A stretch of DNA of 63,562 nucleotides, filler included, from Octopus bimaculoides (lineage: Eukaryota), in NCBI RefSeq assembly GCF_001194135.2. It is 6 parts of 6 records of this genome, joined end to end, with 100 filler letters (N's around TTAATTAATTAA, not from the genome) between each part and the next. Parts side by side here need not be neighbours in the genome. Positions count along the whole stretch, not along the records: positions 43,417 to 60,300 come from NC_069008.1; 5 more parts are not named here. One strand, 5' to 3'. A model generated the notes under the pieces. The model had not been told where the DNA came from, searched no databases, and saw nothing but the letters and a program-made list of their open reading frames with translations. Positions 13,617 through 61,934 of the stretch are shown piece by piece. The number at the start of each line of letters is the position of its first letter. Position 1 is the stretch's first letter. The position numbers and the translations under genes were made by a program.

Positions 13617-14178
13617 CGTATACTAAACTATATCAAACACTCACGCAACATGACTACACTTATATATTAAATATAAGTGTAGTACGAAACAGTATTGAAT
13701 AAAATATATGCGTGTTCAATGATGTTAAACAACATTGTGTACACTTACATGTGGCAAGATCTTACGTGCTAGAAAATGACTCGGAAGAAATTTCTTCTCT
13801 AAACCCGAACACTAAACCTAAAACCCTAAAGCTAAACTGTACAAACGTACGAATGATGTCATAAATAACAGTACCGCCGATAGTTGTTGTTGACACACAA
13901 CGGCATTAATTTTATTCAAGAGAAACGATCCCATTACACCGCCACAACGTATTGTTGACACTCCACAGCAGTAATTGTTTCCACCTCAATAGACGTCAGT
14001 GATTGGTTGAAATTACCGAAATACGACAAATTTAACACGAAATAGCTTTAAAAGTATAAACTTTTCTCAACAACACTAAGAGTAAAAGATGTTTTATATG
14101 ACACATTCTACCAGTGTCGCAGGTTTGAAAATGTTTCTTTAGGAAACAAATGGTGTCCGCCAAATCAGAAAGACCCGT
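13617..14178. mobile_element. MITE-like element, right end only, related to 53390-53906
   Basis: Shares gtcagtgattggttgaaatta.cgaaat with 53720-53750, has degenerate (ccctaaa)n and ends ...tcagaaagaccc. The left end is in the 13345-13616 gap. Confidence 0.5.
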
Positions 14179-21418: not shown

Positions 21419-21448
21419 GGGGGTGGGGGGTGTTGGTGGTGGTGGTGG

Positions 21449-21491
<43 letters not shown>

Positions 21492-21933
21492 AATACCAGG
21501 TGACTCTCATCGTTTTGCTCTTAGCTTACCGGAAGTGTTTTCATGTATATTGATTTGACTAGGTACAAAAGAAGGGCTACAGCAAATATTCTGCTCTATA
21601 CCACAGATTTGCTTGCCAGTTGTTTGACCTTAACCAGTGGAGCATGTCTCTTAGTGGCTGACGATATCTGCATCCCTGATCACGAGCAGAAGCAGTGGGG
21701 GAGAATCAAAGCCATGTGTTGGGAGGAATTATTTGGGGTTTGGGTAATTCACCTTTGGAAACATATGCTGCTTCATTCAACATCCTTAAAAAAACGCTTA
21801 TTCAGGGAACTTTTAAGCAGGATGGGCTACTCGACGTGAAGAAAATTCTCATTGGGACCTGGCTTCAAGGTCATGCGCTGTTTATCTTGAGGCATGTGCC
21901 TACTGTATCCTTATCAGATGGGCAGTCATGATG

Positions 21934-43316: not shown

Positions 43317-43695
43317 NNNNNNNNNNNNNNNNNNNNNNNNNNNNNNNNNNNNNNNNNNNNTTAATTAATTAANNNNNNNNNNNNNNNNNNNNNNNNNNNN
43401 NNNNNNNNNNNNNNNNTATGAATTCTCACACTAATAGTCGTCACATATCACCACTTTTTAATTTCTGCAACTGTATTGAATGTGCAATCATAAGCATCAT
43501 TTCATATATATATGTGTATAGATGTATGATTTTTGCATGTAAATAAATGCTAAAAGAATGTATTTTCAAATCTTTTATTCACTGAATTTGCTTATATTTA
43601 AAATAAATTGTATTAAATATGGTTTTCAATGGCAGTCAAAAATGACCACTTTGAGATTTGTAAGAAGAAAAAAATGTTGGTACTTCTAGTGTTAA

Positions 43696-43904
43696 CCCTT
43701 TAGCATTTAAACCAGCCATCTCTAGCCCAAATATACTACATATTTTACGTTCAAACTAGCCAGAGTAGGCCTCTTACAATGTCATTCTAAAAACAAACAC
43801 TCACATTATCAAACCTTGAAAGCTGTGAGATAATGCATGACAAATTGAAAACAATGTGAATAAATAAAGATCACATTTGATAGAATAATCTACATGGTTA
43901 AAGG
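43696..43904. mobile_element. piggyBac-like MITE in the ZNF 3' UTR
   Basis: TTAA|ccctttagcat ... atggttaaagg|TTAA. A homologous partial copy is in the paralogous UTR at about 51780-51935. Confidence 0.7.
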
Positions 43905-43928
43905 TTAAGTAACCACTTACAGATAATA

Positions 43929-45437
43929 TTAGTGGGATTGCTTCTTCCCCTTATGAACACATTTGTGATAAGCTAAGTTGTTATGTTGAGTGAATGACCT
44001 ACCGCAGATATCACAAAGATATGGCTTCTCTCCTGTATGGAGACATTTGTGAGAAATTAAGGTGCCATGTTGAGTGAATGACCTACCACAGATGTCACAA
44101 TGATGTGGCTTCTCTCCCATATGGATAAGTCTGTGTTTAGATAAATTAGAACTCATAGAGAATGATTTACCACAGATATCACAGTGATGTAGCTTCTCTC
44201 TTGTATGGAAACGTTTGTGAGTAGCTAAGTTGCCACCACGAGAGAATGATTTACCACAGATATCACAGTGATATGGTGACTCTCCTGTATGAATACATTT
44301 GTGATTAGTCAAGCTATCTGTCCGAGAGAATGATTTACCACAAATGTCACAGTGAAATGGCTTCTCCCCAGTATGAGTACGCTTGTGTCTAGTGAAGTTT
44401 ATGGCTGAAGGGAATGATTTACCACAGACACCACAATGACATTGCTTTTCTCCTGTATGGATATATCTGTGAGTAATTAAGTTACTCTTTATAGAAAATG
44501 ATTTACCACAGATGTCACAAGTATATGGTCTCTCTCCTGAATGAATACTTTTGTGTACAGTTAGGTTACTATTTACAGAGAAAGATTTCTTACAGATGTC
44601 GCATTGATATGGCTTCTCTCCGGTATGAATACGTTTATGGTAAGTTAAAGAACTGTAGCCAGAAAATGATTTACCGCAGATATTACAGGTATATGGTGTC
44701 TCTCCTGCATGAATACGTTTGTGAGAAGTTAAAGTACTACTTTGAGAGAATGATTTACTACAGATGTTACATTGGTACGGCTTCTCCCCTGTATGAACAC
44801 GTTTGTGGGACTTTAAAACACTTTGGTCTGAGAATGATGTACCACAGACATCACAGTGATACGGTTTCTCTCCGGTATGAAGACGTTTGTGCTTAGTCAA
44901 GTTATGCTTTCGAGAGAATGATTTACCACAAATATCACAGTGAAATGGCTTTTCTCCAGTATGAACACGTTTGTGAGAATTCAAAGTACTTTGGTCAGAG
45001 AATGATGTACCGCAGACATCACAATGATAAGGCTTCTCTCCGGTATGAATACGTTTGTGTGTAGTCAAGCTATTTTTTTGAGAGAATGATTTACCACAGA
45101 TGTCACAGTGATATGGCGTCTCTCCAGTATGAATTCGTTTGTGGGTAGTTAAGTTACTGGCTGAAGAGAATGATTTATCACAGACATCACAATGATATGG
45201 ATTCTCTCCTGTATGGATATGTTGTTGACTAATTAAGTCACTACTTACAGAAAATGATTTACCACAGATGTCACAGTGAAATGGCTTCTCCCCTGTGTGA
45301 ATACGTTTGTGTCTATTCAAGTGACCCTTTTGAGAGAAGGACTTTTTACAGACATCGCAGTCATGTGATAATTTTTGTTTCTCTTTTTCTCTATCTTCTG
45401 GAAAAATCTCTTCCTTCACTTTCTCACTCTTTTCCAT
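43929..45437 (-). CDS. Poly-C2H2 zinc-finger protein, 502 aa, 17 fingers (finger 2 lacks its first His)
   Basis: Uninterrupted ORF with TGEKP linkers, ATG at 45437 and TAA at 43929-43931. Acceptor tttcAG at 45746-45745 and AATAAA at 43579-43574. No KRAB/BTB-like effector domain is evident. Confidence 0.95.
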   Translation of the reverse strand: MEKSEKVKEEIFPEDREKEKQKLSHDCDVCKKSFSQKGHLNRHKRIHTGEKPFHCDICGKSFSVSSDLISQQHIHTGENPYHCDVCDKSFSSASNLTTHKRIHTGETPYHCDICGKSFSQKNSLTTHKRIHTGEKPYHCDVCGTSFSDQSTLNSHKRVHTGEKPFHCDICGKSFSRKHNLTKHKRLHTGEKPYHCDVCGTSFSDQSVLKSHKRVHTGEKPYQCNICSKSFSQSSTLTSHKRIHAGETPYTCNICGKSFSGYSSLTYHKRIHTGEKPYQCDICKKSFSVNSNLTVHKSIHSGERPYTCDICGKSFSIKSNLITHRYIHTGEKQCHCGVCGKSFPSAINFTRHKRTHTGEKPFHCDICGKSFSRTDSLTNHKCIHTGESPYHCDICGKSFSRGGNLATHKRFHTREKLHHCDICGKSFSMSSNLSKHRLIHMGEKPHHCDICGRSFTQHGTLISHKCLHTGEKPYLCDICGRSFTQHNNLAYHKCVHKGKKQSH

Positions 45438-46548
45438 TATTTTTCTATGAACTTCACCTTTTTCTCTTTTTTTTTTTGCTTCTATAGTCTTTTGTTTACA
45501 AATATTTCACCTGCTGTCTTTCTGTCCAGTGTTACCTTTGTCACAAAACAACTAAATTTATCCACGTTTAATCTGCAATCAGACTAGTCTTGTAGACACT
45601 CCAGCCAGAGTAAATATATCAGAGGAATTCTACCATAGACTTATAGAAACAATCTTCTATATCTGTTCTGTACAATATTTTGGTCTTTAAAAGATGATAA
45701 ATAATGAGAATGTATCTTCTGCTATTCCAATGTCATCTGATATTCTGAAATAATAAAGAAACAACAGTGTAAGATATAGAGGCTACTTAGAAAATACAGA
45801 TTCAACATTTCCATAAACTCTTAAAATATTATCTAGAATTCTTCACGATCTCTTCGTGATGTATGCATATGTCTTTGACTAGTTAACTAATTACTTAATA
45901 AGTTCTCTTCTTTGACACCTTAAATGAAAAAGGAGAAATTATTGGAAATAGTCTTTACTCATTTTTCCCCATCTAAGACATGATTTTTGATAACTGAACA
46001 TTACCAAATTAGACACTAAATGGGGTGGGGGTATTGATCTGGAATGCAAGAAAGAAAAGAATATTGATTGTTAAACACCGGACATCATTAACCTCAATTA
46101 CAATCAGGTTGAAAGTTGAGGGAAAATTTCTTGAAAATCAAAAGGACCTGCCACCTGTTTCGGACTGGAACTTCAACAACTATAATGACTAATTTTCAGT
46201 CCTAAATATAATGTAGCAATATTCACAAAATAATAATTTACAAAAAATTAGGAGAAATGGGAAATTACTCATTTTGCCCCGCCTACTTATTTTGTCCCTT
46301 TCCTCTATATCAAGAAACAAACATTCGATAAATTATAATAAAGCATTGGTTTCTCAACATTTCTGTGGTTGGAATGTATTTGAGGATATTTCTCCAACTA
46401 AAACACACAACAAACAAACGTGGAAACGATGGATCGTGTAGAAGGTTGCCTCCATAGCTAGAAATAGCAGCCAAATGTCGCACACATCAAAGGACATCTG
46501 AGACAGAAAGTATTAAAAGATTAAATGCTTATATTGTTTAATACTTAC

Positions 46549-46710
46549 GGAAATGCTTTTATAAAGGACAGTGTTGTTAGAAGTGCGTCAGGCGGTAGAG
46601 AAATCTTATAAATGTGTCTGGGAATTGATTAAGAGAAATACAGGTACGACTCACGTATGCTCTGATGTGACGAATAGAGGTGGGTGTACGTTTAGTGCGC
46701 ATGCGTATGA
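46549..46710 (-). promoter_or_regulatory. Putative promoter and non-coding first exon of the minus-strand ZNF gene
   Basis: NRF1-like TGCGCATGCGTA (46696-46707 on plus) and donor ttcc|GTAAGT at 46548-46547. Conserved with the paralogous region 48059-48222. Confidence 0.6.
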
Positions 46711-47439
46711 AATATTGGTTTCAACGTTTGGCGCAACGCCAGCAATTTCGTGGGTAACGATGGTGCTTAAGTCAATTACATGGATCCCCAGTAGTTAACT
46801 GGTACTTATCATATTGAACCCCAAGCAAAAAAAATTAAAGGCAAAGTTGACCTCACCGGAATTTTGGGCACACATACACGAATGTGGGCGTACGTGAAAC
46901 ACGTGCACACCCGCCCACTTCCTGTATTTTTTTTTTTCCAAAATGCCTTCGGATCCACAGAATACGATTTTGACCCAAATATCGCGTTTTCAAAATTATA
47001 ATTTCCACCCCTCCCCACTTTCTTAATTTTTAAAACTTTCCGGATTACAGAGATTACAAATGTGAGAATTTTTTTTTGTTTTATTTTGCAAATTTTCTTA
47101 AAGAAACCACGCTCCTCCTCCCCCCACCTTGCTTACCCATCGCGCGCTCGCGAAAGGGGTGCGGTGGGGTGGGTAGTTGGGTTAAAGGACTCGGAACATT
47201 CGCATCGTCACACATCGTCAGTCCATGGCCTCAAAACTATAGTGTTTGACCCGTGCTCGGAACATTCAGGATATGTGAATGTTCCGAGCCCTCTCCCCAC
47301 CTCCACCCCGTTCACGAGCACGCATTTCTTTTTTTTTTTTGTTTTATTTTCATATTCGTTCCCAGCAAGTTGTTTTACACCTATTACATTAATTATTTTT
47401 CGTTTTTGAGCTTGGGTCAAACGCTTTAGTTTGACTTTC

Positions 47440-47823
47440 GCTTTTACTCGTTTCAGTCATTTGACTGCGGCCATGCTGGAGCACCACCTTTTAGTCGAGG
47501 TAATCGACCCCAGGACTTATTCTTTGCAAGCCTAGTACTTATTCTATCGGTCTCTTTTGCCGAACCGCTAAGTTACGGGGACGTAAACACACCAGCATCG
47601 GTTGTCAAGTGATGTTGGGGAGACAAACACAGGCACACACACATATATATATATACATACATATATACGACGGGCTTCTTTCAGTTTCCATCTACCAAAT
47701 CCACTCACAAGGCTTTAGTCGGCCCGAGGCTATAGTAGAAGACACTTGCCCAAGGTGCCACGCAGTGGGACTGAACCCGGAACCATGTGGTTGGTAGGCA
47801 AGCTACTTACCACACAGCCACTC
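47440..47823 (-). mobile_element. tRNA-derived SINE family C, full length with internal (TA/CA)n
   Basis: Head aggagtggctgtgtggtaag...gggttcagtccc (boxes A and B) and tail cagcatggccgcagtc. Partial copies at about 15290-15430, 32563-33200, 33670-33870, 35800-35980, 36465-36660, 37615-37740, 42050-42150 and 63362-63521. Confidence 0.85.
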
Positions 47824-48058
47824 CTGTGCCTATAAATTTTTAGAATCTTTCCTCCCACCTTCGGTAAAATGAGTTTTTCTGAACAAATTTTAATACAGTC
47901 GTAATCTACAGCAACTGAAGCGTACTTGTGGAAAATTTCATTAGAAATAACCTTGTTTTTTTTTCTTCTATAAATCGATAACTGGAGTAAAGGTAATCGA
48001 ATTACCATCCCCCCACTCTCTCACTCCGAAATGGCTGGCCTTGTGCCTAAATATTTCA

Positions 48059-48222
48059 TGCGCATGCGCACTAAACGAACTTCCGCCTTCATTCATTATA
48101 TCTTGATAAATACGTCTGGTTCCAGAATTTCTCTTAGTTACCTCCCAAACACATTTATAATAGATTTCTCTACCACCCGACGCACTCATAACAATAACAC
48201 TATCCTTTATAAGAACATTTCC
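48059..48222 (+). promoter_or_regulatory. Putative promoter and non-coding first exon of the plus-strand ZNF gene
   Basis: Perfect NRF1 palindrome TGCGCATGCGCA (48059-48070), ETS-like ACTTCCG (48079-48085), donor ttcc|GTAAGT (48223) and matching acceptor tttAG at 49437-49438. Confidence 0.65.
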
Positions 48223-48996
48223 GTAAGTATTAAACAATGAAAACATTTAATCTTTTAATACTTCGTGTCTCAGATGTTCTTTGATGTGTGCGACATTTGG
48301 CTGCTATTTCTAGCTATGGCGGCTACCTTCCACACGATCCATCGTTTTCCACGTTTGTTTGTTGTGTGTTTTAGTTGGAAAAATGTTCTCAAATACACTC
48401 CAACCACAGAAATGTTGAGAAATCAATGCTTTATTATAATTTATCGAATGTTTGTTTCTTGATATAGGGAAAAGGGACAAAATTAGTTAGCGGGGCAAAA
48501 TGAGTAATTTCCCGAATATTGCAATAATATATTTATGGTTGAAAATTGGGTAGAGACGGACTATATGTAATCTGGTCCTTTCCCCCCCCTTNNNNNNNNN
48601 NNNNNNNNNNNNNNNNNNNNNNNNNNNNNNNNNNNNNNNNNNNNNNNNNNNNNNNNNNNNNNNNNNNNNNNNNNNNNNNNNNNNNNNNNNNNNNNNNNNN
48701 NNNNNNNNNNNNNNNNNNNNNNNNNNNNNNNNNNNNNNNNNNNNNNNNNNNNNNNNNNNNNNNNNNNNNNNNNNNNNNNNNNNNNNNNNNNNNNNNNNNN
48801 NNNNNNNNNNNNNNNNNNNTGTAATTGAGGTTGCTAATTAAAATATATTCTTTTCTCTGTTGGATTTCAAGTCAATTTTTCTTCATTACAGTGTCTAATG
48901 TGGTAATTTTCAAGTTTCGCGAAATGATTTTTAAAATGGGGCAAATTCTCTTCAGCATCATGGTATTAACGAGAAAAAAAAATTATTAAAATTCTC

Positions 48997-49027
<31 letters not shown>

Positions 49028-49210
49028 CCGGTGGCACGTAAAAGCACCCACTACACTCGGAGTGGTTGGCATTAGGAAGGGCATCCAGCTGTAGAAACTC
49101 TGCCAAATTAGACTGGAGCCTGGTGTAGCCATCTGGTTTCACCAGTCCTCAGTCAAATCGTCCAACCCATGCTAGCATGGAAAGCGGACGTTAAACGATA
49201 ATGATGATGA
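49028..49210 (+). mobile_element. SINE-like family D fragment in the ZNF intron
   Basis: Matches the reverse complement of 612-790. It is absent from the paralogous intron. Confidence 0.75.
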
Positions 49211-49728
49211 TACATACATACACACATACATATAAATGTTAACACAATATGAATGTGTAGCTAGAGTTAAGAAATATTTTAGTTCTACACAAGATTTTCT
49301 TATGTAAATTTTAATAAATTGAATGGTTCTGTTGTTCAAGTAAATATTTATTTCTAGAGTTTATCTCTATGGAAATGTTGAATCTGTATTTTCTAAGTAG
49401 CCTCTATATCTTACACTGTTGTTTCTTTATTATTTTAGAATATCAGAAGACATTGGAATAACTGAAGATACTTTCTCATTATTTATCTTCTTCTAAGCAC
49501 CGAAATGAAAATATTGTACAGAATAGATACATAAGATTCTCTACATAGATTTCCCTAAATCTATGGTAGAATTCCTACAATATACTTACTCTGATATTGT
49601 GTTATTAGCAAACTTTCAGGACATCACAGGTTGGAGTGTCTACAGCAGTTGAAATATTTGTAAACAAAAGACTACAGAAGCAAAAAGAAGAAAAAAAATA
49701 TCTATATTGTGTTTTTCAAAGAAAAATA

Positions 49729-51267
49729 ATGGAAAAAGGTGAAAAATTAAAGGAAGTGAATTTTCCTGATGATAGAGAAAAAGGGAGTAGAAAATTGTCA
49801 TATGACTGTGATGTCTGTAAAAAGTCCTTCTCTCAAAAAGGATATTTGAATAAGCACAAACGTGTTCATACAGTAGAGAAGCCATTTCAATGTGACATCT
49901 GTGGTAAATCATTTTCTATAAGTAGCCAATTAATCAGTCACAGACATAGCCATACAGGAGAGAAGCCATTTCATTGTGGTGTCTGTGGTAAATCATTCTC
50001 TTCATCCAGTGTCTTTGCTACACACAAGCGGATTCATACAGGGGAGAAGCCATTTCACTGTGACGTCTGTGGTAAATCATTCTTTCAAAAACACAACTTG
50101 ACTAGACACAGACGTCTACATACTAGGGAGAAACCATATCCCTGTGATGTCTGTAGTACATCGTTCTCTGACCGAAGTGCATTAAATTATCACAAACGTG
50201 TTCATACAGGGGAGAAGCCATTTCACTGCGACATTTGTGGTAAATCATTCTCTCAAAAATGTGACTTATCTAGACACAAACGTATTCATACTGGAGAGAA
50301 GCCTTATCCCTGTGACGTCTGTGGTACATCATTCTCTGAGCACAGTATTTTAACTACTCACATACGTATTCATACTGGAGAGAAGCCGTATCAATGTAAC
50401 ATCTGTGGTAAATCATTCTCTCAAAGTAGTGTTTTAACTTCTCATAAACGTATTCATACAGGGGAGAAGCCATATCACTGCAACATCTGTGGCAAGTCTT
50501 TTTCTAGAAGTAGTACCTTAACTAAGCACAAACGTATTCACACAGGAGAGACACCATATTTATGTGATATCTGTGGTAAATCATTCTCCCAAAGTGACAG
50601 CTTAGCTACTCACAAGCGTTTTCATACAGGAGAGAAGCCATATGATTGTGATATCTGTGGTGAATCATTTTCTGTAAGTACTTACTTAATCAGTCACAGA
50701 TATAGCCATTCAGGAGAGAAGCCATATCATTGTGGTGTCTGTAGCAAATCATTCTCTTCAGCCAGTGTTTTCACTACACACAAACGTATTCATACAGGGG
50801 AGAAGCCATTTGACTGTGATGTCTGTGGTAAATCTTTCTATCAAAAATATAAATTGACTACACACAAACGTATTCATACAGGAGAGAAGCCATATCCCTG
50901 TGATGTCTGTGGTACATCTTTCTCTGGCCAAAGTGCTTTAAATTCTCACATGCATCTCCATACGGGGGAAAAGCAATTTCACTGTGACGTTTGTGATAAA
51001 TCATTCTCTCAAAAATATAACTTGACTAGACACAAACGTATTCATACCAGGGAAAAGCCCTATCACTGTGATGTCTGTAGTACATCGTTCTCTGACCAGA
51101 GTGCTTTAAATACTCACATACGTGTTCATACAGGGGAGAAGCTATTTCACTGTGACATTTGTGGTAAGTCATTCTCACAAAAAAACAACTTAACTAGACA
51201 CAAACGTATTCATACTGGAGAGAAGCCTTATCCCTGTGATGTCAGAAGTACATCATTCTCTAACTGA
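49729..51267 (+). CDS. Poly-C2H2 zinc-finger protein, about 512 aa, 17 intact fingers plus a broken 18th
   Basis: ATG at 49729 (MEKGEK..., homologous to MEKSEK... of the paralog; the ORF-track start at 49636 is GTG). TGEKP linkers. Ends [16 protein letters not shown] at 52048-52053. Confidence 0.9.
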
Positions 51268-51775
51268 AGTGGTTCAAATTCTCACGTTTTCATACAGGGG
51301 AAAGCGACTTCACCGTGATATCTGTGGTAAACCATTCTCTCAAAAATATAACTTGATTAATCACAAATATGTTCATACTAGGGCGAAATCAAATCCACCC
51401 GCCTTATCACTGTGATATCTGTGGTACATCATTTTGTGGCCAAAGTGCTTTAAATTCTCACAAACATGACCATAGAGGAGAGAAGCCATATTATTGTAAT
51501 ATCTGTGGTAAATTATTCTCTGTTAGTTGTGATTTATCTCAACACAGACATCTCCACACAGGTGAGAAGTGATATCTGTGACAAATTGTTCTATGGATGT
51601 ATATAGTTGCTTGACTAGTCCCAAACGTATTCATAATTCATTCTCTCAAGGTAACCACTTAGCTTTTCACAAACGTTTCCATAGAGGTGAGAAGCCCTAT
51701 CACTGTGATATCTGTGGTAAATTGTTCTCCAGAAGTAGTTGCTTGACTATACACAAACGTATTCACATTATTTTT
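51268..51775 (+). pseudogene. Decayed continuation of the zinc-finger array (about 6 remnant fingers after the stop)
   Basis: Frameshifted finger remnants such as [42 protein letters not shown] and [21 protein letters not shown]. Confidence 0.85.
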
Positions 51776-53389
51776 AATTTGTCATGCATTATCTGACAGC
51801 TTTCAAATTTAAATGGATAGTTTATTTTTAGAATGACATTGTCGGGTAGGCGTAAGAGGCCGAGTCTGGCTAGTTTGATCAAAAAATAATTAGAAAATTT
51901 GGCCCAGATATGACTGATTTAAATTCTAAAGTGTTAACACTAAAAGTGCCAACATTTCCTCCTAAGAATGACCGTGGCAATTATTTTTGACTGTCAATGA
52001 AAATTTGTATGTAATAGAATTCATTTTAAATATAAGCAAATGCAGTGAATAAAGGATTTGAAAATACATTCTTTTAGCATTTATTTGCATGCAAAAATTA
52101 TATTTCTATACACATATCAAATTATGCTCATGATTGCACATTCAATACAGTTCCAGAAATTAATAAGCAAAAGTGGTGATAAACGACCACTTGGTACTTG
52201 TAGTGTTAACTAAACGTGTATCTATTCATATAGATGTATGACTATCAATCAATGTGACCATTCATAAGAACAAGAAGCATTTTGGCCTCCTCGTGAACTG
52301 GTGATAGTGTTGGTGACTAGCGCCAGACACGTTTGTCAAGATGTAATGAATGGAAGCGGAAGTACGTTTGATGAGCATGCATATGAAATGTTGGGTTCAT
52401 ATTTTGTCACAAGGCCAGCAAATTCGGGAGTGGAGTGGAGTGGTGTGTAAATCGATTACATGGACCTCAGTAGTTAACTGGTATTTATTTTATTGAACCC
52501 CCAAAATGGTGAAAAGCAAAGATTACCCTAAAGGATGATAGGCAAAGTGGACCTTGCCGGAATTTCGGAATACATACGCAATTGTGCCTCCTTCAAAGGA
52601 AGACCATCAAGGATGGTCTTCCTTTGACGCATCAAAAAGGCCATGACTAAGAAGGGGTCGAAGTTTCTGAAAAGTTTCAAAAGTTGGCATTGTTTTCTTA
52701 TAATTTTCAGGAAAAAATGAGTCATATTCATATGAAATTTTCTACAACTACCTTCCAGAGGGTTAACATTACGATTATGTCGGAATTTAATAAGAAAAAT
52801 GAAAGAAATTTGGTTGGCATGTATACATACTGAGATACAACTCAACATCTTCGAAATTTCGAGCTTTATTTACAGATATGTGTCAGATTGTATGAGTAAT
52901 GCCCATCGATTTTTTTCATAAGAAAATCAATCATCATAATCAATATCATGTGAAAGGTGTTCAAAACAAATTCCGTTAAGGAATATACATTTTTCGGCAG
53001 GTTATGAGTAAATAAAGCCAAATCGTGTTAATCACTTCACCCCACAGACGGTGAATGAAACATTCCAAACACGGTCACTCTTCGAAACACCAGTGTTGGA
53101 AGGGCGGCTGCTGATGAAGGAAAATGTTCTCTATGTGGCCTGTGTGTTTTCTGTACTCTGATTATTATCTTTTTGTCTACGTTTTGTTTACAACGTCCTG
53201 TACCCAGGTAGATATAGGTATGCACATACATGTACGTATATATGCATATACTCTTATTATTTGTATTTCAAGATAGTAAAGATTGTTTACCAACACAACA
53301 GGACTGCTATGTTATGTTGCCAAATAATCTTTACTACAAAGTACTGTTGCAGAATATCTCACGTTGTGAGATTTTAAACTAGTAATTTT

Positions 53390-53906
53390 GGATCTTTTTT
53401 AAAACGGGGGCCACATTTTTCATTAACGAAACACTTTGAAACTTGGAACANNNNNNNNNNNNNNNNNNNNNNNNNNNNNNNNNNNNNNNNNNNNNNNNNN
53501 NNNNNNNNNNNNNNNNNNNNNNNNNNNNNNNNNNNNNNNNNNNNNNNNNNNNAAGTGCCGACTACATAAACAAACGATTCTGAAACAATTAACCCTAACC
53601 CTAGGGTTAGGGTTAAAGGAAATTTAAAATGAAAAAAACAAATAAAACGAAGGTATGGAGATTAAATACGCTTTACATCGCTTAATCAGCCAAAGGAGTA
53701 AATGTAAACAACTGAATACTTGTCAGTGATTGGTTGAAATTATCGAAATAAGACAATTTTTTACATGAAATAAATTCGAATACAAAAATATTTTTCTGTT
53801 CTATAACACAAAATAGATAAGTATACGAAGTTTGAAAGTCTTTCCGTACCAAAAACACTACGTAAAACATTAATGAAAAATGTGGCCCCCGTTTTAAAAT
53901 AGATCC
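53390..53906. mobile_element. Merlin-like MITE (GG-starting ~37-bp TIRs, 8-bp TSD gtaatttt)
   Basis: TSDs at 53382-53389 and 53907-53914. TIR ggatct..ttaaaacgggg.ccacatttttcattaa. Internal telomere-repeat palindrome at 53589-53616. Confidence 0.8.
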
Positions 53907-53949
53907 GTAATTTTCTAAACTCTTTGATAGACGCAATCTATACCAACTT

Positions 53950-54600
53950 AACCATATTAGTACCTGCATGTACGAGGAGTAAAACGTTGCTCCCTGTGAG
54001 TGAGAGGCGTAAATCGTCGTTCCCTGTGAGCGAGAGGAGGAAATCGTTGTTCCCTGCGAGTGAGAGGAAGAAATAGGTCGTTGTTGTTGATAAATACGTT
54101 AGTAGTTGTCCCTTAGACCGTAAAATTTTAAAATTTCTTGTATCTTGTTGTCTATGTCTTCTTAGTGACCTCCCTTCCACCATACCTTTTAGATAAAATT
54201 CTCTTGGTTGTCTCCCTTTGACCATATTTTTGTTTTTTAGTATCCCTTCTAGAATTTCTTTTTGCACAGTTAACGTCTCAGAACCGCTGTTCTATTGAAG
54301 TTAATAGTTTGCTGTAAAATGTATATTTGTTCAAATTAACTCCTCTTCTGAAGTATTCCTTTCACTTTTGCTTGATTCTACATCTCTTTTTTTTATTTTA
54401 TTGACAATTCAGGCGTATTGTTTGTAATATTTCATTAGAAAATCGTTATAAAATTTCATATTCGATAACTTTCGTTATATAAAAGCTAAAACTAATCTAA
54501 TTTGACAACCAAAAGATTGCTTGCAGCTTCTTTATATATTTATTGTCAATATTTCATCTTATATACAAAATATGACTGTGAGTTTTCGATATTGTTGTTA
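53950..54600 (-). mobile_element. Probable Penelope-like 5' ORF remnant including three 30-bp tandem units (53975-54070)
   Basis: Lys/Arg-rich decayed peptide. A PLE-type terminal repeat lies at 53085-53260. Family assignment is weak. Confidence 0.35.
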
Positions 54601-54899
54601 CATCCGTTCTCAGTCTAACCTTCAAGTCATTGAATGAACAGAATTTCGTGAATAAGTAATTATTGAAAATTGTTGTCAGAAAGATTAATAAGAATCATAA
54701 TGATATCTCTGTGATTGACGATGTGATCGTATCAAATATTAATATGTACACACACACACATATATGTATGTGTATGTGTATATTTCTGTTTATACATGTG
54801 TGTATATATATATGTATATATGTGTGTATGGGGACATGCACACATATGGGTATATTTGTATAGGCATGGGTACGTATGTGCATATGTGTAAATGTGGAC

Positions 54900-54954
<55 letters not shown>

Positions 54955-55599
54955 CACATATATGTATGTATGTATATGTGTGTATATGTATTTATGTATG
55001 CATGTATGTTTTCACACATTTATATGTATGTGTTGTCCAATTTTCTAACGGAGAAATGAATGGCGTCATAACCTTATCCATCTATTGTTTTCATACTCGG
55101 TCATAATGTCTTACGTTTAAGATGATTCCCATGCATTCCCTGCAGAGAAGGTTACAATTTTAATATCAAATATCCCTATGGATCACACAGGTTGTAATCC
55201 TTTGAAACATATGTAGGAATAAAGTATGCAATTATAACATGTGTTTTCTCCATTCCTTAAATTTTTAAATATATATATATATATATAGCTGAATGTATAT
55301 GTGTGTATGTTTGTTTGTACGTACATGTATGTATGTATATGTGCAGTATTTGGAGTGAGTGCACGTAGATTTGTATATTTTGTTTTATGTATGTATACTC
55401 ATACATACATTTATATGTCTAGACACGCGCATATATACTTAAATGATAAACTTTGGAAAAGTTCAACAATTTCAGTGATTCCTTAGATCTGTAGTCTTCG
55501 AATGAACTTTCTTCTTTCTGGAATTGAGAATTCTAATTTCAGAAGATGGGTAATTAAGCTGCACACACACACATACCCATATATTGTCCGCATGGAATT

Positions 55600-55990
55600 T
55601 CAATCCCAGAGCCTAAATCAGTGAGGGACCTGGATAACGACATGAGTGATGACACCTCTTTCCAAGTGCACATTACCAGGATGGTGACAAAGTGCAGACG
55701 ACTGGCTGGATGGATCCTGAGAACATTCAGAACTAGAAATAAGGAAACCATGATGGTCCTCTAGAGGACATTCATTCTCAGCCACCTGGATTACTGCTTC
55801 CAGCTGTGGTCACCCAACGGTGTGAAATTAACAGCGGACTTTGCAGCAATCCAGAGAAGATCGACCTCTTCCTGTCGAGTGTCCCAGATGAACCTACCTC
55901 GCGGCAAGAGGTGAAAATGAGGGTAGCTACATCAAACTCCATTCTTCACCAAGCGCCACATATTGGAGGAGGCTCTCAGTAATAACAGTG
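55600..55990 (+). mobile_element. CR1-clade LINE RT C-terminal fragment with internal deletion
   Basis: SVRDL..MSDD.SF..HI.RMVTKCRRLAGWILRTFRTRNKETMMVL*RTFILSHLDYC.QLWSP...IQR, then FLSSVPDEP...SNSILHQ. Confidence 0.8.
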
Positions 55991-56541
55991 TAGCAAAACG
56001 GCGGTGCATTAGCATGGCCACAGCTCTGACCTGAAACTACAGAAAATATATCGATATTCCTCCCTGTGCCTGTGAAATCTTGTATCCCAGTGTGTGAATC
56101 TGAGAGGGGAATATGTTGAATAAAATCATATTTAACTGATCCTCCTGTATTTTCTTTGATGCAAAGCCAGGAAGTTTTCAGCCCCACCTCATATGTACGT
56201 ATGAATCGAGGGTGACTATCGCATGGTAACTAGAACTGTTGAATTATAGCAGCCAAATCTCCCTCAAATCACAGCCTACTGTCTATTTGTATGTACATGT
56301 GTATGAACCAATAACAGAAACCTCAACATGTAGCAAGACATGGTAGAAATAGCAGGCAAGTCTCCCTCAAATCATACCCTCTGTGTTTATGGACATACAT
56401 GTATACGTATAAGCCAACAAGGGAGACATCTACAAGGTTGCTAGACCAGCTGGAAATGGCAGGCAAATCTCTCTCAGATGACACATTAATGTTTTATGCA
56501 TGAACAAATGAAGAAGACTTTCACACACACACACATATTGA

Positions 56542-56991
56542 GGTACTACTAAAGCAGCGTGGTCCCTAACTTGCAGTTGCGCGTCCCCGCTAGCTAGTCG
56601 TGAGTGGTCGATCCTACAAAAAGTGCGCGCGCGCGCAAATGAATACTTGGTTGGGGTAATCTTCAAGTTTAGGGGGGTAAAAAAGTAAAAAAAAAATATT
56701 CAAGGAAAATAACTGAACGACTTACCAGTATTATCCGTTTTCTTCTAGCTGTTTATAAATAAATCACACCCTAACCCTAACGTCAATCAAATCACGTGTG
56801 TGATTTATTTATAAACAGAGATGTACGGAGAATACTGGTAAGACGTTCAGTTACTTCCCTTGAATATTTTTATTTATTTTTTACCCCCCTAAACTTGAAG
56901 ATTACCGGGTTAGGGTTAGGATCTACCACTCACGACTAGCTAGCGCGGACGCGTGACTGCGCGTTCGAGACCACGCTGCTTTAGTAGTACC
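56542..56991. mobile_element. Merlin-like fold-back MITE, 450 bp, perfect 8-bp TSD catattga
   Basis: TSDs at 56534-56541 and 56992-56999. TIR GGTACTACTAAAGCAGCGTGGTC. Inverted arms extend over most of the element, with internal (CCCTAA)2 and (TTAGGG)2. Confidence 0.85.
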
Positions 56992-57126
56992 CATATTGAA
57001 AGAGAATGTATGAATTGAAGACTATTACATCGACATTTGTTGGTGAGTAGAATGCAGTGTAAATGATGCAGGTTGAACAACAAGAACAATAACAGAAACA
57101 AAGTAGTGTAATATTTACGGACAAAT

Positions 57127-59792
57127 TTATTTTTCATAATGAAAGAAAGCAAAAGATTGACGTCCTATGGTAATTCCAAAAACCATGAAAGAATTTTCTG
57201 AAACATCAAAACCAAGAACTGCGAAAACATCATTATCATCATGAGGTAGGAGTAAATATTCTTCAATATTTTCAGATGCTAGGTGTTCAATATGTCCAGG
57301 TATTTGGTAAATATTGCTATATTTGTCTGTTATATAAACACAGTCACCATGTGTGGTTAGATAAGGTCTGTAAATATTATGTTCAATATCTGCTGATAGT
57401 TTCATTCTCCTGATCAAATGTTCCCTATACCAATAGACAACATACTGATAGTCAGCATTCATATCTGCTGGGTCCATCATTTCCCAATTCACAGCAACAA
57501 TATCACCATCAGATGACGCTACTACATCACAAAATATCATCTCCAATTCCACCTCTACGTTCACCTCTCTAGAACAAATTTCTCGATTGTATTTACACGT
57601 CTCACCGTTGATATCAACTAAATCTATATAGGTATGATAGTATCTTCCAGCCTCAGTTACGGCTCTAATATAATGACCACCACACACAAGTTGATTGTTG
57701 TTGTATTTATAAATACTGTTGTAGTATTTGCCTGTGTTGATGGTTTTTAAACGACGGAGATCTTTGTTGAAGAACATCAGTTGTTTACCAAAGACGATTA
57801 TGAAACATTGATCTGTCCACCGACAAATGTCTAGTGGTTGTTGTTGTGGTAGTTGTTTGTGTTGAAGTATGTCACCTGTTGTTGTGTTGATTAATGTGAC
57901 AGTGTCTCTAAACATCAACACACTGACATTGCCATCCAACTTAATTAGTCTACTGTTATAATCTCTATTGTCCACATATTCATAACAAACAGGTTCCTCG
58001 AATGCAGGAATGGAAAAAGGGACCATTGCTGTTCTATATGGAAGTCTCCTCACTGATATTTCATCAGTTCCTGGCATACTCTCCGCTATGTAATTACCAC
58101 ATCTCACCTTTAATCTACCTTTACTAATTATTTCACATGATTCACCTCTTCTTCCTCTCTCCCCATCTTCTCTACTGTATTTCAGTTCATTAATTAATTC
58201 ATTACTGAATATTTCCTTGTTCATCTGAGATGTAATGGAAGGGAAACAAAGACCAGAATCAAGATTTAATAACGACACAGATTCCAGAACCTTCACTTGG
58301 TCCCCATCAATCTTTATGCAATGACATTCAATCAATTCAATATGTTGACACCAGTAAATACCCCCCACTTTTCTCCATATTACACCATAAGGGACGAGAC
58401 TTTCCCAAACGTTATGATTCACCAAATCTTGTTTCAGTTGAAATATTTCTTGTCTGTTTGGAAGTGTGACCATTATCTCTCTTTCGCCTGTAAAACACAC
58501 ACCACCAACTAAACTTGCCACATTTCTGTGACATAGCAGCTCCCCATCTTCATCAAATATTTTAACATTTCCATTATTGGCTTTTTCACACACAACTGTC
58601 TTTCCTTCATCAGAAATATCAAAATCTTTTACTTGAACAGCAAATTCTTCTGTTTGTAAACGACAAACAGGGAATCTTTCCCGATTAACATTAAACAAAC
58701 CTTCAACATACAATTTATTTCTGTGACTTCCAATAAACCTTGGTCCTTTACTGTCTATACTGGAGAAATTTACTTCACCTTTATAAATTCTTTCATTTAA
58801 AAATATTCTGTTATATTCACCAGTGTATGTCAAGCACGTAATGGTTTCTAACAAACAGTAAACATCATATCTTTCCCGCCATCCATTAATATACACATAA
58901 CTGTCATCAATTGTCATGGGCTTGTGGTTACAGTTATATTCCTTGTAGTGTCTAACTGAATATAAATACTGACCATCACTACTGAGGAAATTGATGAATT
59001 TGTCATTGCTGACAACGATAACATCATTAGCAGTCACTGTTATATTGCATATGCCATCGACATAATCAATGACTTCACCACCTCTTGTTAATAATGTCTC
59101 AGGTATGTCTATTTGTTTTATTATATTCACAGTCGAATGAACCTCATCAAAATCAATGACATACAAAGTACGTTCATCTCCATCCCAACTACATAATAGT
59201 AGATTGTCCGAAAAAGAAGTAATATACTTATATTTATCTCTCGTTTGGTAAATTACCAACGACAATGGAAATTTGACTTTTAATGTCAACAATCGGTATT
59301 TATCATCCTCAGTCGTAATAACCAGTGTGTTTGAGTGCCATCGACACATATCGATAGGAGAAACATTCAATTTGATAGAGTCCAGGAGTTGACCATCAAA
59401 TGTGAATATCTTAACATTTTCATTTTTCCTATCATATCCTGCAATCAGGTTATTTTCTGTAACAACCAAACGATCAATCTTCACTCGCAATTTGTCTCCC
59501 AAATGTTGAGGGAGATGAATATGTCTGGCTTTATCAGAAACTGTCAGATCCTGTAGATATAAAGATGATGACAACATTTCACTGACAGAAATGTTTCTGG
59601 AAAATACATCTACTTGGTCGATAAAAACATCAACTTGGTTGTTTTTAACCAGATCTCTCAACACCAAATTATGATCATTTATGGCAAACATACGAGTGTT
59701 GTCTATCAGATAGATAAACATTTTATCTATACAACCACCATAGAGATTGGGGGGAGGTTTCATTTGGGATAGTAAAACACTGTGGACCATCT

Positions 59793-59833
<41 letters not shown>

Positions 59834-60300
59834 TCACTACCGCTACTACTATCACTACCACTACTACTATCACTACCACTACTACTTCTACGACGACGAT
59901 GTCTACCATCATGACCACCATCACCAACACTAGTGCAGCATTGAAATACTCTTCTCTTAGTAACAATTAATAGCTTTTGTGTTTCATTTTCTATTGCTAA
60001 TGCTTTCACTAGAAAAGGGATATTAATTGTCTTAATTGTTTCAACTTGATTATAATTTTTCTTAATGGCTAAAATATCTAAATGTGATGGTTTATCACAA
60101 TAACAAACAATTTCACCTTCACCCATCTTACACACCCGTACATAAGGCTGCCCTAATGATACACTTCTCACTGTCTTTGATAGGTTTCCGATGACCCTTA
60201 ATTGTTTCTGTAGGGGTAATGTGACACCTATATGATTAGAATCCCATCGACATATATCCGTAGCTGTAGACGGCAGAGATAATCTCGACACAATGTCTCC
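57127..60300 (-). CDS. Uninterrupted ORF >=1054 aa: tandem NHL-like/beta-propeller repeat protein, 5' end missing in a gap
   Basis: 3.17 kb without a stop in AT-rich DNA. The frame stays open to the gap at 60301 (GDIVSRL...; the track start is GTG). Recurrent blade motifs DICRWDSNHIGVT, DMCRWHSNTLVIT, GVCFTGEREIMVT and DICRWTDQCFIIV, plus YD..NENVKIFTFDGQLL and CE..NGNVKIFDEDGELL. Confidence 0.85.
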
Positions 60301-61934
60301 NNNNNNNNNNNNNNNNNNNNNNNNNNNNNNNNNNNNNNNNNNNNTTAATTAATTAANNNNNNNNNNNNNNNNNNNNNNNNNNNNNNNNNNNNNNNNNNNN
60401 ATATTGCCCGGCATGATAACGATTCTGCAAACTCGCCGCCTTAATAACAACAACAATAATAGGGCAGTGGCTCTCATGGCTTCTGATCTTAACTGATTGA
60501 AAGTGTTATCATGTACATTGTTTTGTCTGAGTATAAAAGATGGGCTACAGCAAATATTCTGCTCAATACCACAGATTTGCTTGTCACTTGTTTGACCTTA
60601 ACCAGTTGAGCATGTCCCTTAGTGGCTGACGATATGTGCATCTCTGATCATGAGCAGTAGTAGTGGGAGAACATCGTGGCCATGTGTTGAGAGGAACTCT
60701 TTGGGGTTGGATAATTCACCTTCGGAAACGTGGGTGTTCCATTCAACATCCTCAAACAACCCTTATTCAGGGACCATTTGAGCGGATAGGCTACTCGATG
60801 TGAAGAAAATTCTAACTAGATCCCACCTGCAAGGTCATGCGCTGTTTATCTTGATATGAGATCATTGTGTTGCGCACATATGGTTGTGATGCATGTGCCT
60901 GGTGTACCATTATCAGACGAGTAGTCATGATGTGTATACTGGGCTTCGTATATTTTACCCCAGTGTTACTTTGATGGTATACACTGCTCTCTCACTCAAT
61001 AATAATGATGATGATAATAATAATAATAATAATAATANNNNNNNNNNNNNNNNNNNNNNNNNNNNNNNNNNNNNNNNNNNNNNNNNNNNNNNNNNNNNNN
61101 NNNNNNNNNNNNNNNNNNNNNNNNNNNNNNNNNNNNNNNNNNNNNNNNNNNNNNNNNNNNNNNNNNNNNNNNNNNNNNNNNNNNNNNNNNNNNNNNNNNN
61201 NNNNNNNNNNNNNNNNNNNNNNNNNNNNNNNNNNNNNNNNNNNNNNNNNNNNNNNNNNNNNNNNNNNNNNNNNNNNNNNNNNNNNNNNNNNNNNNNNNNN
61301 NNNNNNNNNNNNNNNNNNNNNNNNNNNNNNNNNNNNNNNNNNNNNNNNNNNNNNNNNNNNNNNNNNNNNNNNNNNNNNNNNNNNNNNNNNNNNNNNNNNN
61401 NNNNNNNNNNNNNNNNNNNNNNNNNNNNNNNNNNNNNNNNNNNNNNNNNNNNNNNNNNNNNNNNNNNNNNNNNNNNNNNNNNNNNNNNNNNNNNNNNNNN
61501 NNNNNNNNNNNNNNNNNNNNNNNNNNNNNNNNNNNNNNNNNNNNNNNNNNNNNNNNNNNNNNNNNNNNNNNNNNNNNNNNNNNNNNNNNNNNNNNNNNNN
61601 NNNNNNNNNNNNNNNNNNNNNNNNNNNNNNNNNNNNNNNNNNNNNNNNNNNNNNNNNNNNNNNNNNNNNNNNNNNNNNNNNNNNNNNNNNNNNNNNNNNN
61701 NNNNNNNNNNNNNNNNNNNNNNNNNNNNNNNNNNNNNNNNNNNNNNNNNNNNNNNNNNNNNNNNNNNNNNNNNNNNNNNNNNNNNNCTACTGGGCACTGC
61801 ACATATCCTACGCAAAACACTTTCAATGCAGTAACCATAAGAGCATCACAGCAAACCACAGCACATACCCAAGGCACACAGAGCTGCGCTCGGTAGTGAA
61901 GTGAAAGCACGTTATAAAAATAAAACTACTGAGC

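What the first reader, a model, noticed from the sequence alone, without database searches (positions are those of the whole stretch)
57127..60300. Single-exon protein of about four tandem NHL-like propellers with no recognisable partner domain
Seen: at least 1054 codons are open in ~35% GC DNA, while neighbouring laminin exons are about 100 nt. A blade signature ([DG]-[IMV]-C-[RF]-[WT]-x4-5-[ILV]-x-[IV]-T) recurs near residues 12, 312, 597 and 835, about 240-300 aa apart, i.e. propeller-sized modules. Established: molluscan B-box/TRIM-like proteins usually end in one such NHL-like domain, and these families are expanded and fast-evolving. Inference: a concatenated multi-propeller binding protein, perhaps a lineage-specific immune or recognition receptor built by intra-exon duplication. 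The N-terminus is hidden by the join at 60301-60400. This is the best candidate here for an undescribed protein family.
Basis: partly seen in the sequence, partly recalled or inferred. Interest (0 to 1): 0.72.

Follow-up and report, generated by a model that had tools for sequence, protein, structure and literature searches.

The report
Octopus protein of tandem NHL propellers
The long open reading frame is real: it is the last four of six tandem NHL-type beta-propeller domains of an intron-less, multi-copy gene family found only in octopods, derived from the propeller of molluscan TRIM-like proteins, with no known function.

Summary
Window 57127-60300 (minus strand) is open for 1057 codons in 35% GC DNA (chance about 1e-38) and runs off the piece edge.

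It is the C-terminal 60% of a roughly 1,790-aa protein. About 60 'uncharacterized' relatives exist in Octopus vulgaris, O. sinensis and O. bimaculoides, and also in Argonauta hians. Full-length paralogs have one coding exon, a basic and helical N-terminal region of about 200 aa with no Pfam domain, and six propeller-sized modules. The window holds modules 3 (cut at its start) to 6.

The modules are homologous to each other (hhalign up to 95%). They are also homologous to the C-terminal NHL-like domain of a cuttlefish RING/B-box protein (E 2e-8 in 1.8 billion proteins).

Module 4 folds with pLDDT 84 into six four-stranded blades. Its eleven best PDB matches are all TRIM-NHL domains (Thin, TRIM2, TRIM3, Brat).

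The O. vulgaris ortholog sits at a syntenic locus (91% nt identity, dN/dS 0.37), but its N-terminal half carries a frameshift and a stop.

No signal peptide, membrane segment, RING or B-box was found, so 'receptor' is unsupported. I read it as an intracellular multivalent binding scaffold; that function is inferred.

It is a new architecture of a known fold, of moderate interest.

The parts
57127..60300 (-). Open reading frame of 1057 codons plus stop (TAA at 57127-57129). It is the C-terminal ~60% of a ~1,790-aa hexa-propeller protein, and its 5' end is cut by the piece edge.
   Evidence: It aligns over 100% of its length with the C-terminal parts of 1,780-1,800-aa Octopus proteins.
59545..60300 (-). 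Module 3 (aa 1-252). It is an NHL-like propeller that lacks about its first 20 residues because of the piece edge, and it contains a low-complexity loop.
   Evidence: The M3 HMM matches aa 1-252 at 383 bits. The non-octopod NHL-like HMM hits aa 1-119 at 30 bits. AF2 places strands in groups of four over aa 15-122, with pLDDT 70-80 for aa 1-95.
60244..60258 (-). D-I-C-R-W signature of module 3 (aa 15-19).
59794..59895 (-). Arg/Ser-rich low-complexity insert (RRRSSSGSDSSSGSD…S13) inside module 3, encoded by an (AGT/AGC)n microsatellite. Its length varies between paralogs: absent in P0002, present in P0031 and P0034.
   Evidence: (TRF 59793-59891)
58666..59544 (-). Module 4 (aa 253-545): a complete six-bladed NHL-type beta-propeller.
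   Evidence: AF2 with alignment A3 gives pLDDT 84.1, pTM 0.85 and 24 strands, i.e. 6 blades of 4. Foldseek top 11 are all NHL domains: Thin 6d69 E 1.8e-10, TRIM2 7qrv TM 0.67-0.70, Brat 1q7f, TRIM3 7qrw. It is collinear end to end with the NHL-like domain of cuttlefish and bivalve proteins.
59338..59352 (-). D-M-C-R-W signature of module 4 (aa 317-321). The Cys is nearly invariant, also in the non-octopod NHL-like domains (G-[IM]-C-x-W).
57982..58665 (-). Module 5 (aa 546-773): the most divergent and shortest propeller-like module, with a helical/linker stretch at about aa 690-730.
   Evidence: The M5 HMM matches at 416 bits, and it also hits the Sepia TRIM-like NHL region. The non-octopod HMM hits aa 542-638. 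hhalign M4-M5 is 80%. The AF2 model is of low confidence here.
58489..58503 (-). G-V-C-F-T variant of the signature in module 5 (aa 600-604).
57130..57981 (-). Module 6 (aa 774-1057): C-terminal propeller. The model has six groups of strands, and the module is acidic (net charge -14).
   Evidence: AF2 pLDDT is 75-92 over aa 780-1057, and the strands fall into six blades. hhalign M3-M6 is 95% and M4-M6 94%. Charge.
57817..57831 (-). D-I-C-R-W signature of module 6 (aa 824-828).

Best explanation
The ORF is the 3' part of a member of an octopod-specific, intron-less, multi-copy gene family. The complete product (~1,790 aa) has a basic, partly helical N-terminal region of ~200 aa with no known domain, followed by six tandem six-bladed beta-propellers of the NHL type. 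The window holds propellers 3 (cut) to 6.

The propellers descend, by repeated internal duplication, from the single C-terminal NHL-like domain of molluscan RING/B-box (TRIM-like) proteins. The RING, B-box and any other catalytic or membrane-targeting part are absent.

Shown here: the fold, the internal homology, the origin, the taxonomic range, the clustered paralogs, and purifying selection on this C-terminal part.

Inferred: the protein works inside the cell as a non-enzymatic, multivalent binding scaffold. Each propeller would offer one ligand-binding face, to protein or RNA, as NHL domains of TRIM-NHL proteins do. The family would diversify its binding surfaces by birth-and-death and exchange between clustered paralogs.

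My confidence is about 0.9 for the structural and evolutionary identity and about 0.3 for the scaffold function. Whether this particular copy is intact upstream is unknown.
For: - Family and length: 59 hits, all Octopus, and 18 of them are at least 1,650 aa. The window protein aligns over 100% of its length to their C-terminal parts.
- Taxonomic range: Argonauta hians has a 1,913-aa member. All other strong hits that were looked up are Octopus.
- Single coding exon in paralogs.
- Six modules: the A2 HMM and the HMM built only from non-octopod domains each give six in-register hits in P0002, P0009, P0063 and P0061, and four in the window protein. hhalign between modules reaches 95%.
- Link to NHL: the octopus-only profile hits a Sepia RING+B-box+NHL protein at E 1.9e-8 among 1.84e9 proteins, and also NHL proteins of bivalves. 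The profile of module 4 plus those domains hits Thin (1.7e-20), TRIM3, TRIM71, TRIM2 and Brat in the PDB.
- Fold: the AF2 model of module 4 has pLDDT 84 and 24 strands. The Foldseek top 11 are all NHL domains, with TM 0.65-0.70. The whole-window model matches multi-propeller proteins.
- No other domain: Pfam is empty for the window protein and for five full-length paralogs. There is no signal peptide or membrane segment.
- Selection and synteny: 91.3% nt identity to O. vulgaris chr OX597841.1 in one block, with the flanking zinc-finger gene conserved. dN/dS is 0.37, with dS 0.18.
Against: - No Pfam NHL match reaches threshold in the octopus proteins themselves.
- The octopus-only profile reaches solved NHL domains only at E 0.2-4. 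Membership therefore rests on a transitive link and on a predicted structure whose alignment included NHL-like sequences.
- Modules 5 and 3b (window aa 100-265 and 494-750) are modelled with low confidence, so 'six blades' is shown for module 4 and is plausible for module 6 only.
- Net charges of the modules are near neutral to acidic, unlike the basic RNA-binding face of Brat or LIN-41. This weakens the RNA-binding version of the scaffold idea.
- No expression, interaction or localisation data exist.
- The O. vulgaris ortholog has a frameshift and a premature stop upstream of the region seen here.
- Many paralog gene models skip internal stretches, so a good share of copies may be decaying.
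Confidence: 0.6

Rival explanations
1. This copy is a pseudogene or gene fragment. The 1057-codon frame would be the still-open 3' remnant of a family member whose 5' half is already broken, so it makes no full-length protein.
For: - The syntenic O. vulgaris ortholog is split into three ORFs (10001-11260, 11031-12110 and 12207-15428 of L001). It has a frameshift near P0002 residue 389 and an in-frame stop near residue 705, only ~17 codons upstream of where the window begins. Its gene model P0001 has to skip the middle.
- Many other models show internal gaps relative to P0002.
- The window cannot show the 5' 735 codons.
Against: - 1057 codons are open in DNA where a stop is expected every ~12 codons.
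- The same region is open in O. vulgaris too (1073 codons).
- dN/dS between the two is 0.37, with only 3 gapped columns in the alignment. This means constraint over most of the time since the species split.
- The defects in O. vulgaris may be recent, may be assembly errors, or may be specific to that lineage.
Confidence: 0.3
2. The ORF belongs to a mobile element or is a retro-copied or virus-derived gene. That would explain its many intron-less copies.
For: - There are tens of copies per genome and a single coding exon.
- DNA similarity between paralogs starts ~90 bp before the ATG and ends ~50 bp after the stop.
- Repeats and a ~450-bp nested palindrome lie just downstream.
Against: - No transposase, reverse transcriptase, integrase, capsid or other enzymatic domain is found in full-length members.
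- There is clear homology to host TRIM-like NHL domains.
- There is no poly(A) tract after the stop.
- The locus is at the same syntenic position next to the same zinc-finger gene in another species.
- Similarity confined to the ORF is what purifying selection on old duplicates produces anyway.
Confidence: 0.05
3. The protein is a secreted or membrane-bound immune or recognition receptor.
For: - The family is lineage-specific, expanded and fast-evolving.
- Multiple propellers would suit multivalent recognition.
- B-box/TRIM families are expanded in bivalves (PMC8382680).
Against: - Full-length paralogs start with hydrophilic, basic sequence.
- No 19-residue window looks like a membrane helix. 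The highest-scoring ones are Gly/Ser/Thr-containing beta-strand sequences.
- NHL domains of TRIM-like proteins are cytoplasmic (established knowledge of TRIM-NHL proteins).
- An intracellular recognition role is not excluded; see the novel case.
Confidence: 0.05
4. The modules are WD40-type (seven-bladed) rather than NHL-type propellers.
For: - Weak profile hits (E 1e-5 to 5e-4) of profile positions ~497-594 (module 5) to bacterial WD40/STAND proteins.
- A designed WD40 fragment is the best PDB sequence hit of the octopus-only profile, at E 4e-4.
- The whole-window model matches WD40 multi-propeller proteins.
Against: - Those hits are short, single-blade-sized stretches in highly repetitive targets.
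- Module 4 has 24 strands, i.e. 6 blades. Its top 11 structural matches are NHL domains, and WD40 proteins follow with lower TM.
- Each of the M3, M4, M5 and M6 HMMs hits the NHL-like region of the Sepia TRIM-like protein.
Confidence: 0.05

Closest known systems
TRIM-NHL proteins (Brat, Mei-P26, Thin/TRIM32, TRIM2, TRIM3, TRIM71/LIN-41) and the expanded molluscan RING/B-box proteins with an NHL-like C-terminal domain (e.g. Acanthosepion pharaonis CAE1315789.1 = P0080)
   Same: The propeller is the same kind: six four-stranded blades and ~270-290 aa. Module 4 is collinear end to end with the P0080 domain. They share the G/D-[IM]-C-x-W signature in blade 2. Foldseek TM to solved NHL domains is 0.65-0.70, and the profile link is significant.
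   Different: There is no RING, B-box or filamin domain in full-length family members. There are six propellers in tandem instead of one. The Pfam NHL model does not reach threshold. The modules are near-neutral or acidic rather than basic. E3-ligase activity is therefore not expected, and RNA binding is uncertain.
Multi-propeller scaffold proteins built from other blade types (DDB1 with three WD40-like propellers; LRP/LDLR-family YWTD propeller arrays; bacterial 'highly repetitive propeller' 2ymu)
   Same: The architecture is several closed beta-propellers strung in one chain and acting as binding platforms. The whole-window model matches these at Foldseek E ~1e-13.
   Different: The blade family differs (WD40 or YWTD against NHL), and there is no sequence relationship beyond single-blade similarity. 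LRP arrays are extracellular and interleaved with EGF modules, which are absent here.
NHL-repeat proteins without TRIM parts (NHLRC2, peptidyl-alpha-hydroxyglycine lyase, virginiamycin B lyase)
   Same: They have the six-bladed NHL fold without a RING or B-box, and they appear further down the structural hit list and in the profile hits.
   Different: They have a single propeller, often with catalytic metal sites or a thioredoxin partner domain. No such partner or site was identified here.

Membership tests
NHL-repeat six-bladed beta-propeller (Pfam PF01436 clan) | Closed propeller of six four-stranded antiparallel blades of ~40-50 aa each | tested here: met
   Module 4 (window aa 253-545): AF2 pLDDT 84.1, pTM 0.85, 24 strands. 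Module 6 shows six strand groups at pLDDT 75-92. Modules 3 and 5 are modelled too poorly to count blades.
NHL-repeat six-bladed beta-propeller (Pfam PF01436 clan) | Closest structural neighbours are solved NHL domains | tested here: met
   Foldseek against the PDB: ranks 1-11 are Thin, TRIM2, Brat and TRIM3 NHL domains, with E 2e-10 to 5e-9 and TM 0.64-0.70. Caveat: the model's alignment contained NHL-like sequences.
NHL-repeat six-bladed beta-propeller (Pfam PF01436 clan) | Sequence match to the Pfam NHL repeat model above the gathering score | tested here: not met
   No NHL hit appears even at E<=10 for the window protein or at E<=1 for five paralogs. The repeats are too divergent for the 28-residue model.
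NHL-repeat six-bladed beta-propeller (Pfam PF01436 clan) | Significant profile-level homology to proteins that do carry NHL repeats | tested here: met
   The octopus-only profile A1 hits P0080 at E 1.9e-8 in 1.84e9 proteins; P0080 has Pfam NHL at 29.1 bits against a cut-off of 20. The combined profile A2 hits Thin at 1.7e-20 and Brat at 2.8e-14. The direct octopus-only profile against the PDB is only marginal, E 0.2.
TRIM-NHL / tripartite-motif proteins | N-terminal RING and B-box zinc fingers plus coiled coil | tested here: not met
   This is not visible in the window, where the N-terminus is cut. In five full-length paralogs no RING or B-box is found at E<=1. Their N-terminal ~200 aa are basic and helical, without a Cys/His pattern.
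TRIM-NHL / tripartite-motif proteins | One C-terminal NHL domain | tested here: not met
   There are six in-register modules in full-length members and four in the window.
WD40 multi-propeller proteins | WD40 repeat signature and seven-bladed propellers | tested here: not met
   There is no Pfam WD40 hit at threshold. Module 4 has six blades and ranks NHL above WD40 structurally. Only single-blade-length weak hits to WD40 proteins appear.
Transposable-element or viral protein | Enzymatic or structural element domain (transposase, RT, integrase, capsid) and element termini | tested here: not met
   Pfam is empty for full-length paralogs. There is no poly(A) after the stop. The position is syntenic in a second species. 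Termini and target-site duplications were not searched for systematically.
Secreted or membrane receptor | Signal peptide or transmembrane helix | tested here: not met
   Hydropathy scan of five full-length paralogs and the window protein: hydrophilic N-termini, and no convincing 19-residue hydrophobic segment. No dedicated predictor was available.

The most novel reading that the evidence does not exclude
The hexa-NHL family could be an octopod-specific system of intracellular recognition proteins, for example restriction factors against viruses or transposons. In that reading, six rapidly diversifying propeller faces per molecule give combinatorial target recognition, and the genes turn over by birth-and-death and gene conversion inside a chromosome cluster shared with expanded C2H2 zinc-finger genes. 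This would be functionally analogous to diversifying TRIM or NLR/WD40 arrays, but it is built from NHL propellers and has no effector domain of its own.
Probability: 0.12. Interest if true: 0.7.

Novelty: new variant of a known kind. Interest (0 to 1): 0.42.

Why it matters
NHL propellers are known as single C-terminal binding domains, mostly of TRIM E3 ligases that bind RNA or protein. A chain of six of them, stripped of every other TRIM part and amplified to dozens of intron-less copies only in octopods, is an architecture I could not find elsewhere in 1.8 billion representative proteins.

It gives a fold and an origin to a block of roughly 60 'uncharacterized' cephalopod gene models. It also shows how a lineage-specific giant protein arose from a common molluscan domain by internal duplication.

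If the copies are expressed and their propeller faces are under diversifying selection, the family would be a candidate for a cephalopod-specific recognition system. If not, it is an example of rapid birth and decay of a repeat protein. Either way it is a useful annotation, but not a solution to a long-standing problem.

Tried and rejected
- Self-BLASTP of the window protein found no internal repeat. The repeat only appears with profiles.
- Single-sequence Pfam and PDB sequence searches gave only noise: Tudor_krimper, DUF4934, lysis protein via the poly-Ser tract.
- A mixed alignment of full-length and C-terminal-only models, meant to keep the profile under 1,200 positions, failed because hmmbuild still made ~1,690 match states. 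I trimmed the sequences by hand instead.
- AF2 on the whole 1057 aa with 11 close paralogs gave mean pLDDT 56. It is usable only for aa 1-95, 270-400 and 780-1057. Its Foldseek hits say 'multi-propeller' but cannot tell NHL from WD40.
- The octopus-only profile against the PDB did not reach NHL domains significantly.
- The second word-indexed search, with the module-4 profile, added few new relatives: 17 hits.
- A comparison of the family's N-terminal region with the pre-NHL region of the TRIM-like proteins found nothing.
- The net charge of the modules did not support a basic RNA-binding face.
- Literature searches for this family, and for NHL or TRIM expansions in cephalopods, found no description of it. 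One paper only documents the B-box family expansion in bivalves.
- The transposon reading was considered and rejected for lack of any element domain, termini or poly(A), and because of synteny.
Full report
**Observation**

In the piece 43417-60300 the longest ORF is 57127..60291 on the minus strand. Translation from the piece edge at 60300 gives 1057 sense codons and then TAA at 57127-57129. The frame is cut by the edge, so the true N-terminus is missing. GC is 35.2%. From base composition a stop is expected about every 12.5 codons, so the chance of 1057 open codons is about 1e-38.

The signature is found as follows (numbering from 60300):

|---|---|---|
| DICRW | 15 | 12 |
| DMCRW | 317 | 312 |
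| GVCFT | 600 | 597 |
| DICRW | 824 | 835 |

**What the protein belongs to**

A search of 5.8 billion proteins returned 59 hits. All come from Octopus vulgaris, O. sinensis and O. bimaculoides, and all are named 'uncharacterized' or 'hypothetical'.

- Eighteen are 1,650-1,830 aa long. The window protein aligns over its whole length to their C-terminal ~1,050 residues, so about 735 residues lie upstream of the piece.
- The best hit is P0001 (87% identity). It is the product of the syntenic O. vulgaris locus. Window 60300-57056 matches L001 12258-15502 (chromosome OX597841.1) at 91.3% nt identity in one block. The downstream C2H2 zinc-finger gene (window 52311-49641) matches at 89% in the same order and orientation.
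- Nei-Gojobori dN/dS between the two C-terminal ORFs is 0.37, with dS 0.177 and dN 0.065. Only 3 columns of the alignment are gapped.
- Full-length paralogs are encoded by one uninterrupted exon: P0009 at L003 10001-15352, and P0002 aa 8-1790 at L002 15902-21250.

**Range of the family**

An exhaustive profile search (alignment A1, 1.84 billion representatives) found 27 proteins at E<=1e-10. Every one that I looked up is from Octopus, except a 1,913-aa protein of Argonauta hians. One divergent, conserved paralog (P0063/P0093) sits on another chromosome in all three Octopus species. No multi-module relative was found in squids, cuttlefish or other molluscs.

**Internal structure**

I cut 18 full-length paralogs into an N-terminal piece and six modules, in P0002 numbering:

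| Piece | P0002 residues |
|---|---|
| N-terminal | 1-205 |
| M1 | 206-455 |
| M2 | 456-735 |
| M3 | 736-975 |
| M4 | 976-1268 |
| M5 | 1269-1500 |
| M6 | 1501-1790 |

- hhalign gives M3-M6 95% (E 5e-8), M4-M6 94%, M3-M4 82%, M4-M5 80% and M2-M4 57%, all in register. The N-terminal piece matches nothing.
- An HMM built only from four non-octopod domains hits full-length proteins six times and the window protein four times, at aa 1-119, 253-481, 542-638 and 799-934.
- The window therefore holds module 3 (its start cut off), 4, 5 and 6.
- Module 3 carries a variable Arg/Ser low-complexity loop, encoded by a microsatellite at 59794-59895.

**What the modules are**

- Neither the window protein nor five full-length paralogs match any Pfam family at threshold.
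- The first non-octopod hits of the octopus-only profile are P0080 (E 1.9e-8), P0082, P0084 and P0085.
- P0080 is a Sepia (Acanthosepion) pharaonis protein with RING, B-box and NHL repeats by Pfam. P0082 is a bivalve NHL protein.
- Module 4 aligns end to end with their C-terminal domain at 18-21% identity and shares the G/D-[IM]-C-x-W motif.
- A profile of module 4 plus these domains hits the solved NHL domains of Thin (1.7e-20), TRIM3, TRIM71, TRIM2, Brat and Mei-P26.
- The octopus-only profile reaches them only at E 0.2 or worse, so the sequence link is transitive.
- AF2 of the whole window protein is poor overall (pLDDT 56). It is all-beta, with strands in groups of four, and it matches multi-propeller proteins.
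- AF2 of module 4 with a 27-sequence alignment gives pLDDT 84.1, pTM 0.85 and 24 strands, i.e. six four-stranded blades.
- The eleven best PDB matches of that model are all NHL domains, with TM 0.64-0.70. WD40 proteins rank lower.
- The weak hits of module 5 to bacterial WD40/STAND proteins are single-blade-sized.

**What is absent**

Full-length paralogs have hydrophilic, basic N-termini. They have no convincing hydrophobic segment, no RING or B-box, and no enzymatic or element-type domain. The modules are near neutral and module 6 is acidic.

**State of the copies**

- The O. vulgaris ortholog has a frameshift near P0002 residue 389 and a premature stop near residue 705. Both are upstream of the region seen here, and the C-terminal 1073 codons are open.
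- Many other gene models skip internal stretches, which suggests birth-and-death turnover.
- DNA similarity between paralogs is confined to the ORF plus or minus about 90 bp.
- L001 resembles L002 at 91% in the 5' half but at 80% in the 3' half. This points to exchange between paralogs.
- There is no poly(A) tract after the stop.

**Interpretation**

Shown: this is the 3' part of an octopod-specific gene for a protein of six tandem NHL-type propellers. It derives by internal duplication from the propeller of molluscan TRIM-like proteins and has been under purifying selection.

Inferred: it acts inside the cell as a non-catalytic, multivalent binding scaffold. The ligand class is unknown, and the charge data do not favour RNA.

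The main rival is that this copy is a decaying or truncated member. That cannot be settled without the upstream sequence and transcripts. The readings as a mobile element, a surface receptor or a WD40 protein are each contradicted by tests made here.

**Comparison and novelty**

The fold and its origin are known kinds. The hexa-propeller architecture without any TRIM part is not described in the papers I could search, and neither is its restriction to octopods. I rate it a new variant of a known kind, of moderate interest.

Noticed in passing
window 43929-45437 (-) and 49636-51267 (+): Two long single-exon ORFs (502 and 543 aa) made of tandem C2H2 zinc fingers (HTGEKPY linkers, 84-bp period by TRF). 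They face in opposite directions downstream of the propeller gene. The second is conserved in synteny with O. vulgaris (89% nt), and both cross-match the same O. vulgaris zinc-finger gene.
   Followed up: partly
window 56542-56991: A ~450-bp nested palindrome lies 135 bp downstream of the stop codon. Its arms are 75 nt at 89%, 43 nt at 91% and 21 nt at 100% complementarity, and each half contains short telomere-like (TTAGGG)2 / (CCCTAA)2 runs. It looks like a foldback or MITE-like element.
   Followed up: partly
window 47438-47558; L001 15500-18300: A ~112-121-bp unit is present once in the window. In O. vulgaris it is amplified into a tandem satellite array of ~25 copies directly downstream of the orthologous gene.
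   Followed up: no
L001 9908-12645 versus 12746-15482 (against L002): The O. vulgaris ortholog is 91% identical to paralog P0002's gene in its 5' half but only 80% in its 3' half. This mosaic pattern suggests gene conversion or recombination between clustered paralogs.
   Followed up: no
L001 about 11070-11137 and about 12110-12207: The O. vulgaris ortholog carries a frameshift and an in-frame stop in its N-terminal half. The public gene model (P0001, 1018 aa) splices around them, producing a chimeric N-terminus plus modules 4-6.
   Followed up: yes
L002 or L003 (searched together, not resolved which), 21440-21697 and 21881-22138: Two extra fragments encoding the last ~91 residues of the protein (66-67% identity) lie in tandem just downstream of a full-length paralog.
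   Followed up: no
P0011 (O. sinensis), module 4: A ~45-residue Asp-rich low-complexity insertion sits in a loop of module 4. With the poly-Ser loop of module 3 in the window, it shows that propeller loops in this family tolerate microsatellite expansion.
   Followed up: no
P0074 (UniProt A0A0L8GPW0, O. bimaculoides fragment of module 4): This 162-aa fragment of the family is automatically named 'Sema domain-containing protein' in UniProt. That is probably a spurious propeller-to-propeller profile match.
   Followed up: no
window codons 601-750 of the ORF (about 58050-58500): Local dN/dS against the O. vulgaris ortholog is 1.15, with low dS (0.07), in the second half of module 5 and its linker. 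Elsewhere it is 0.15-0.56. This may be noise from the small window.
   Followed up: no
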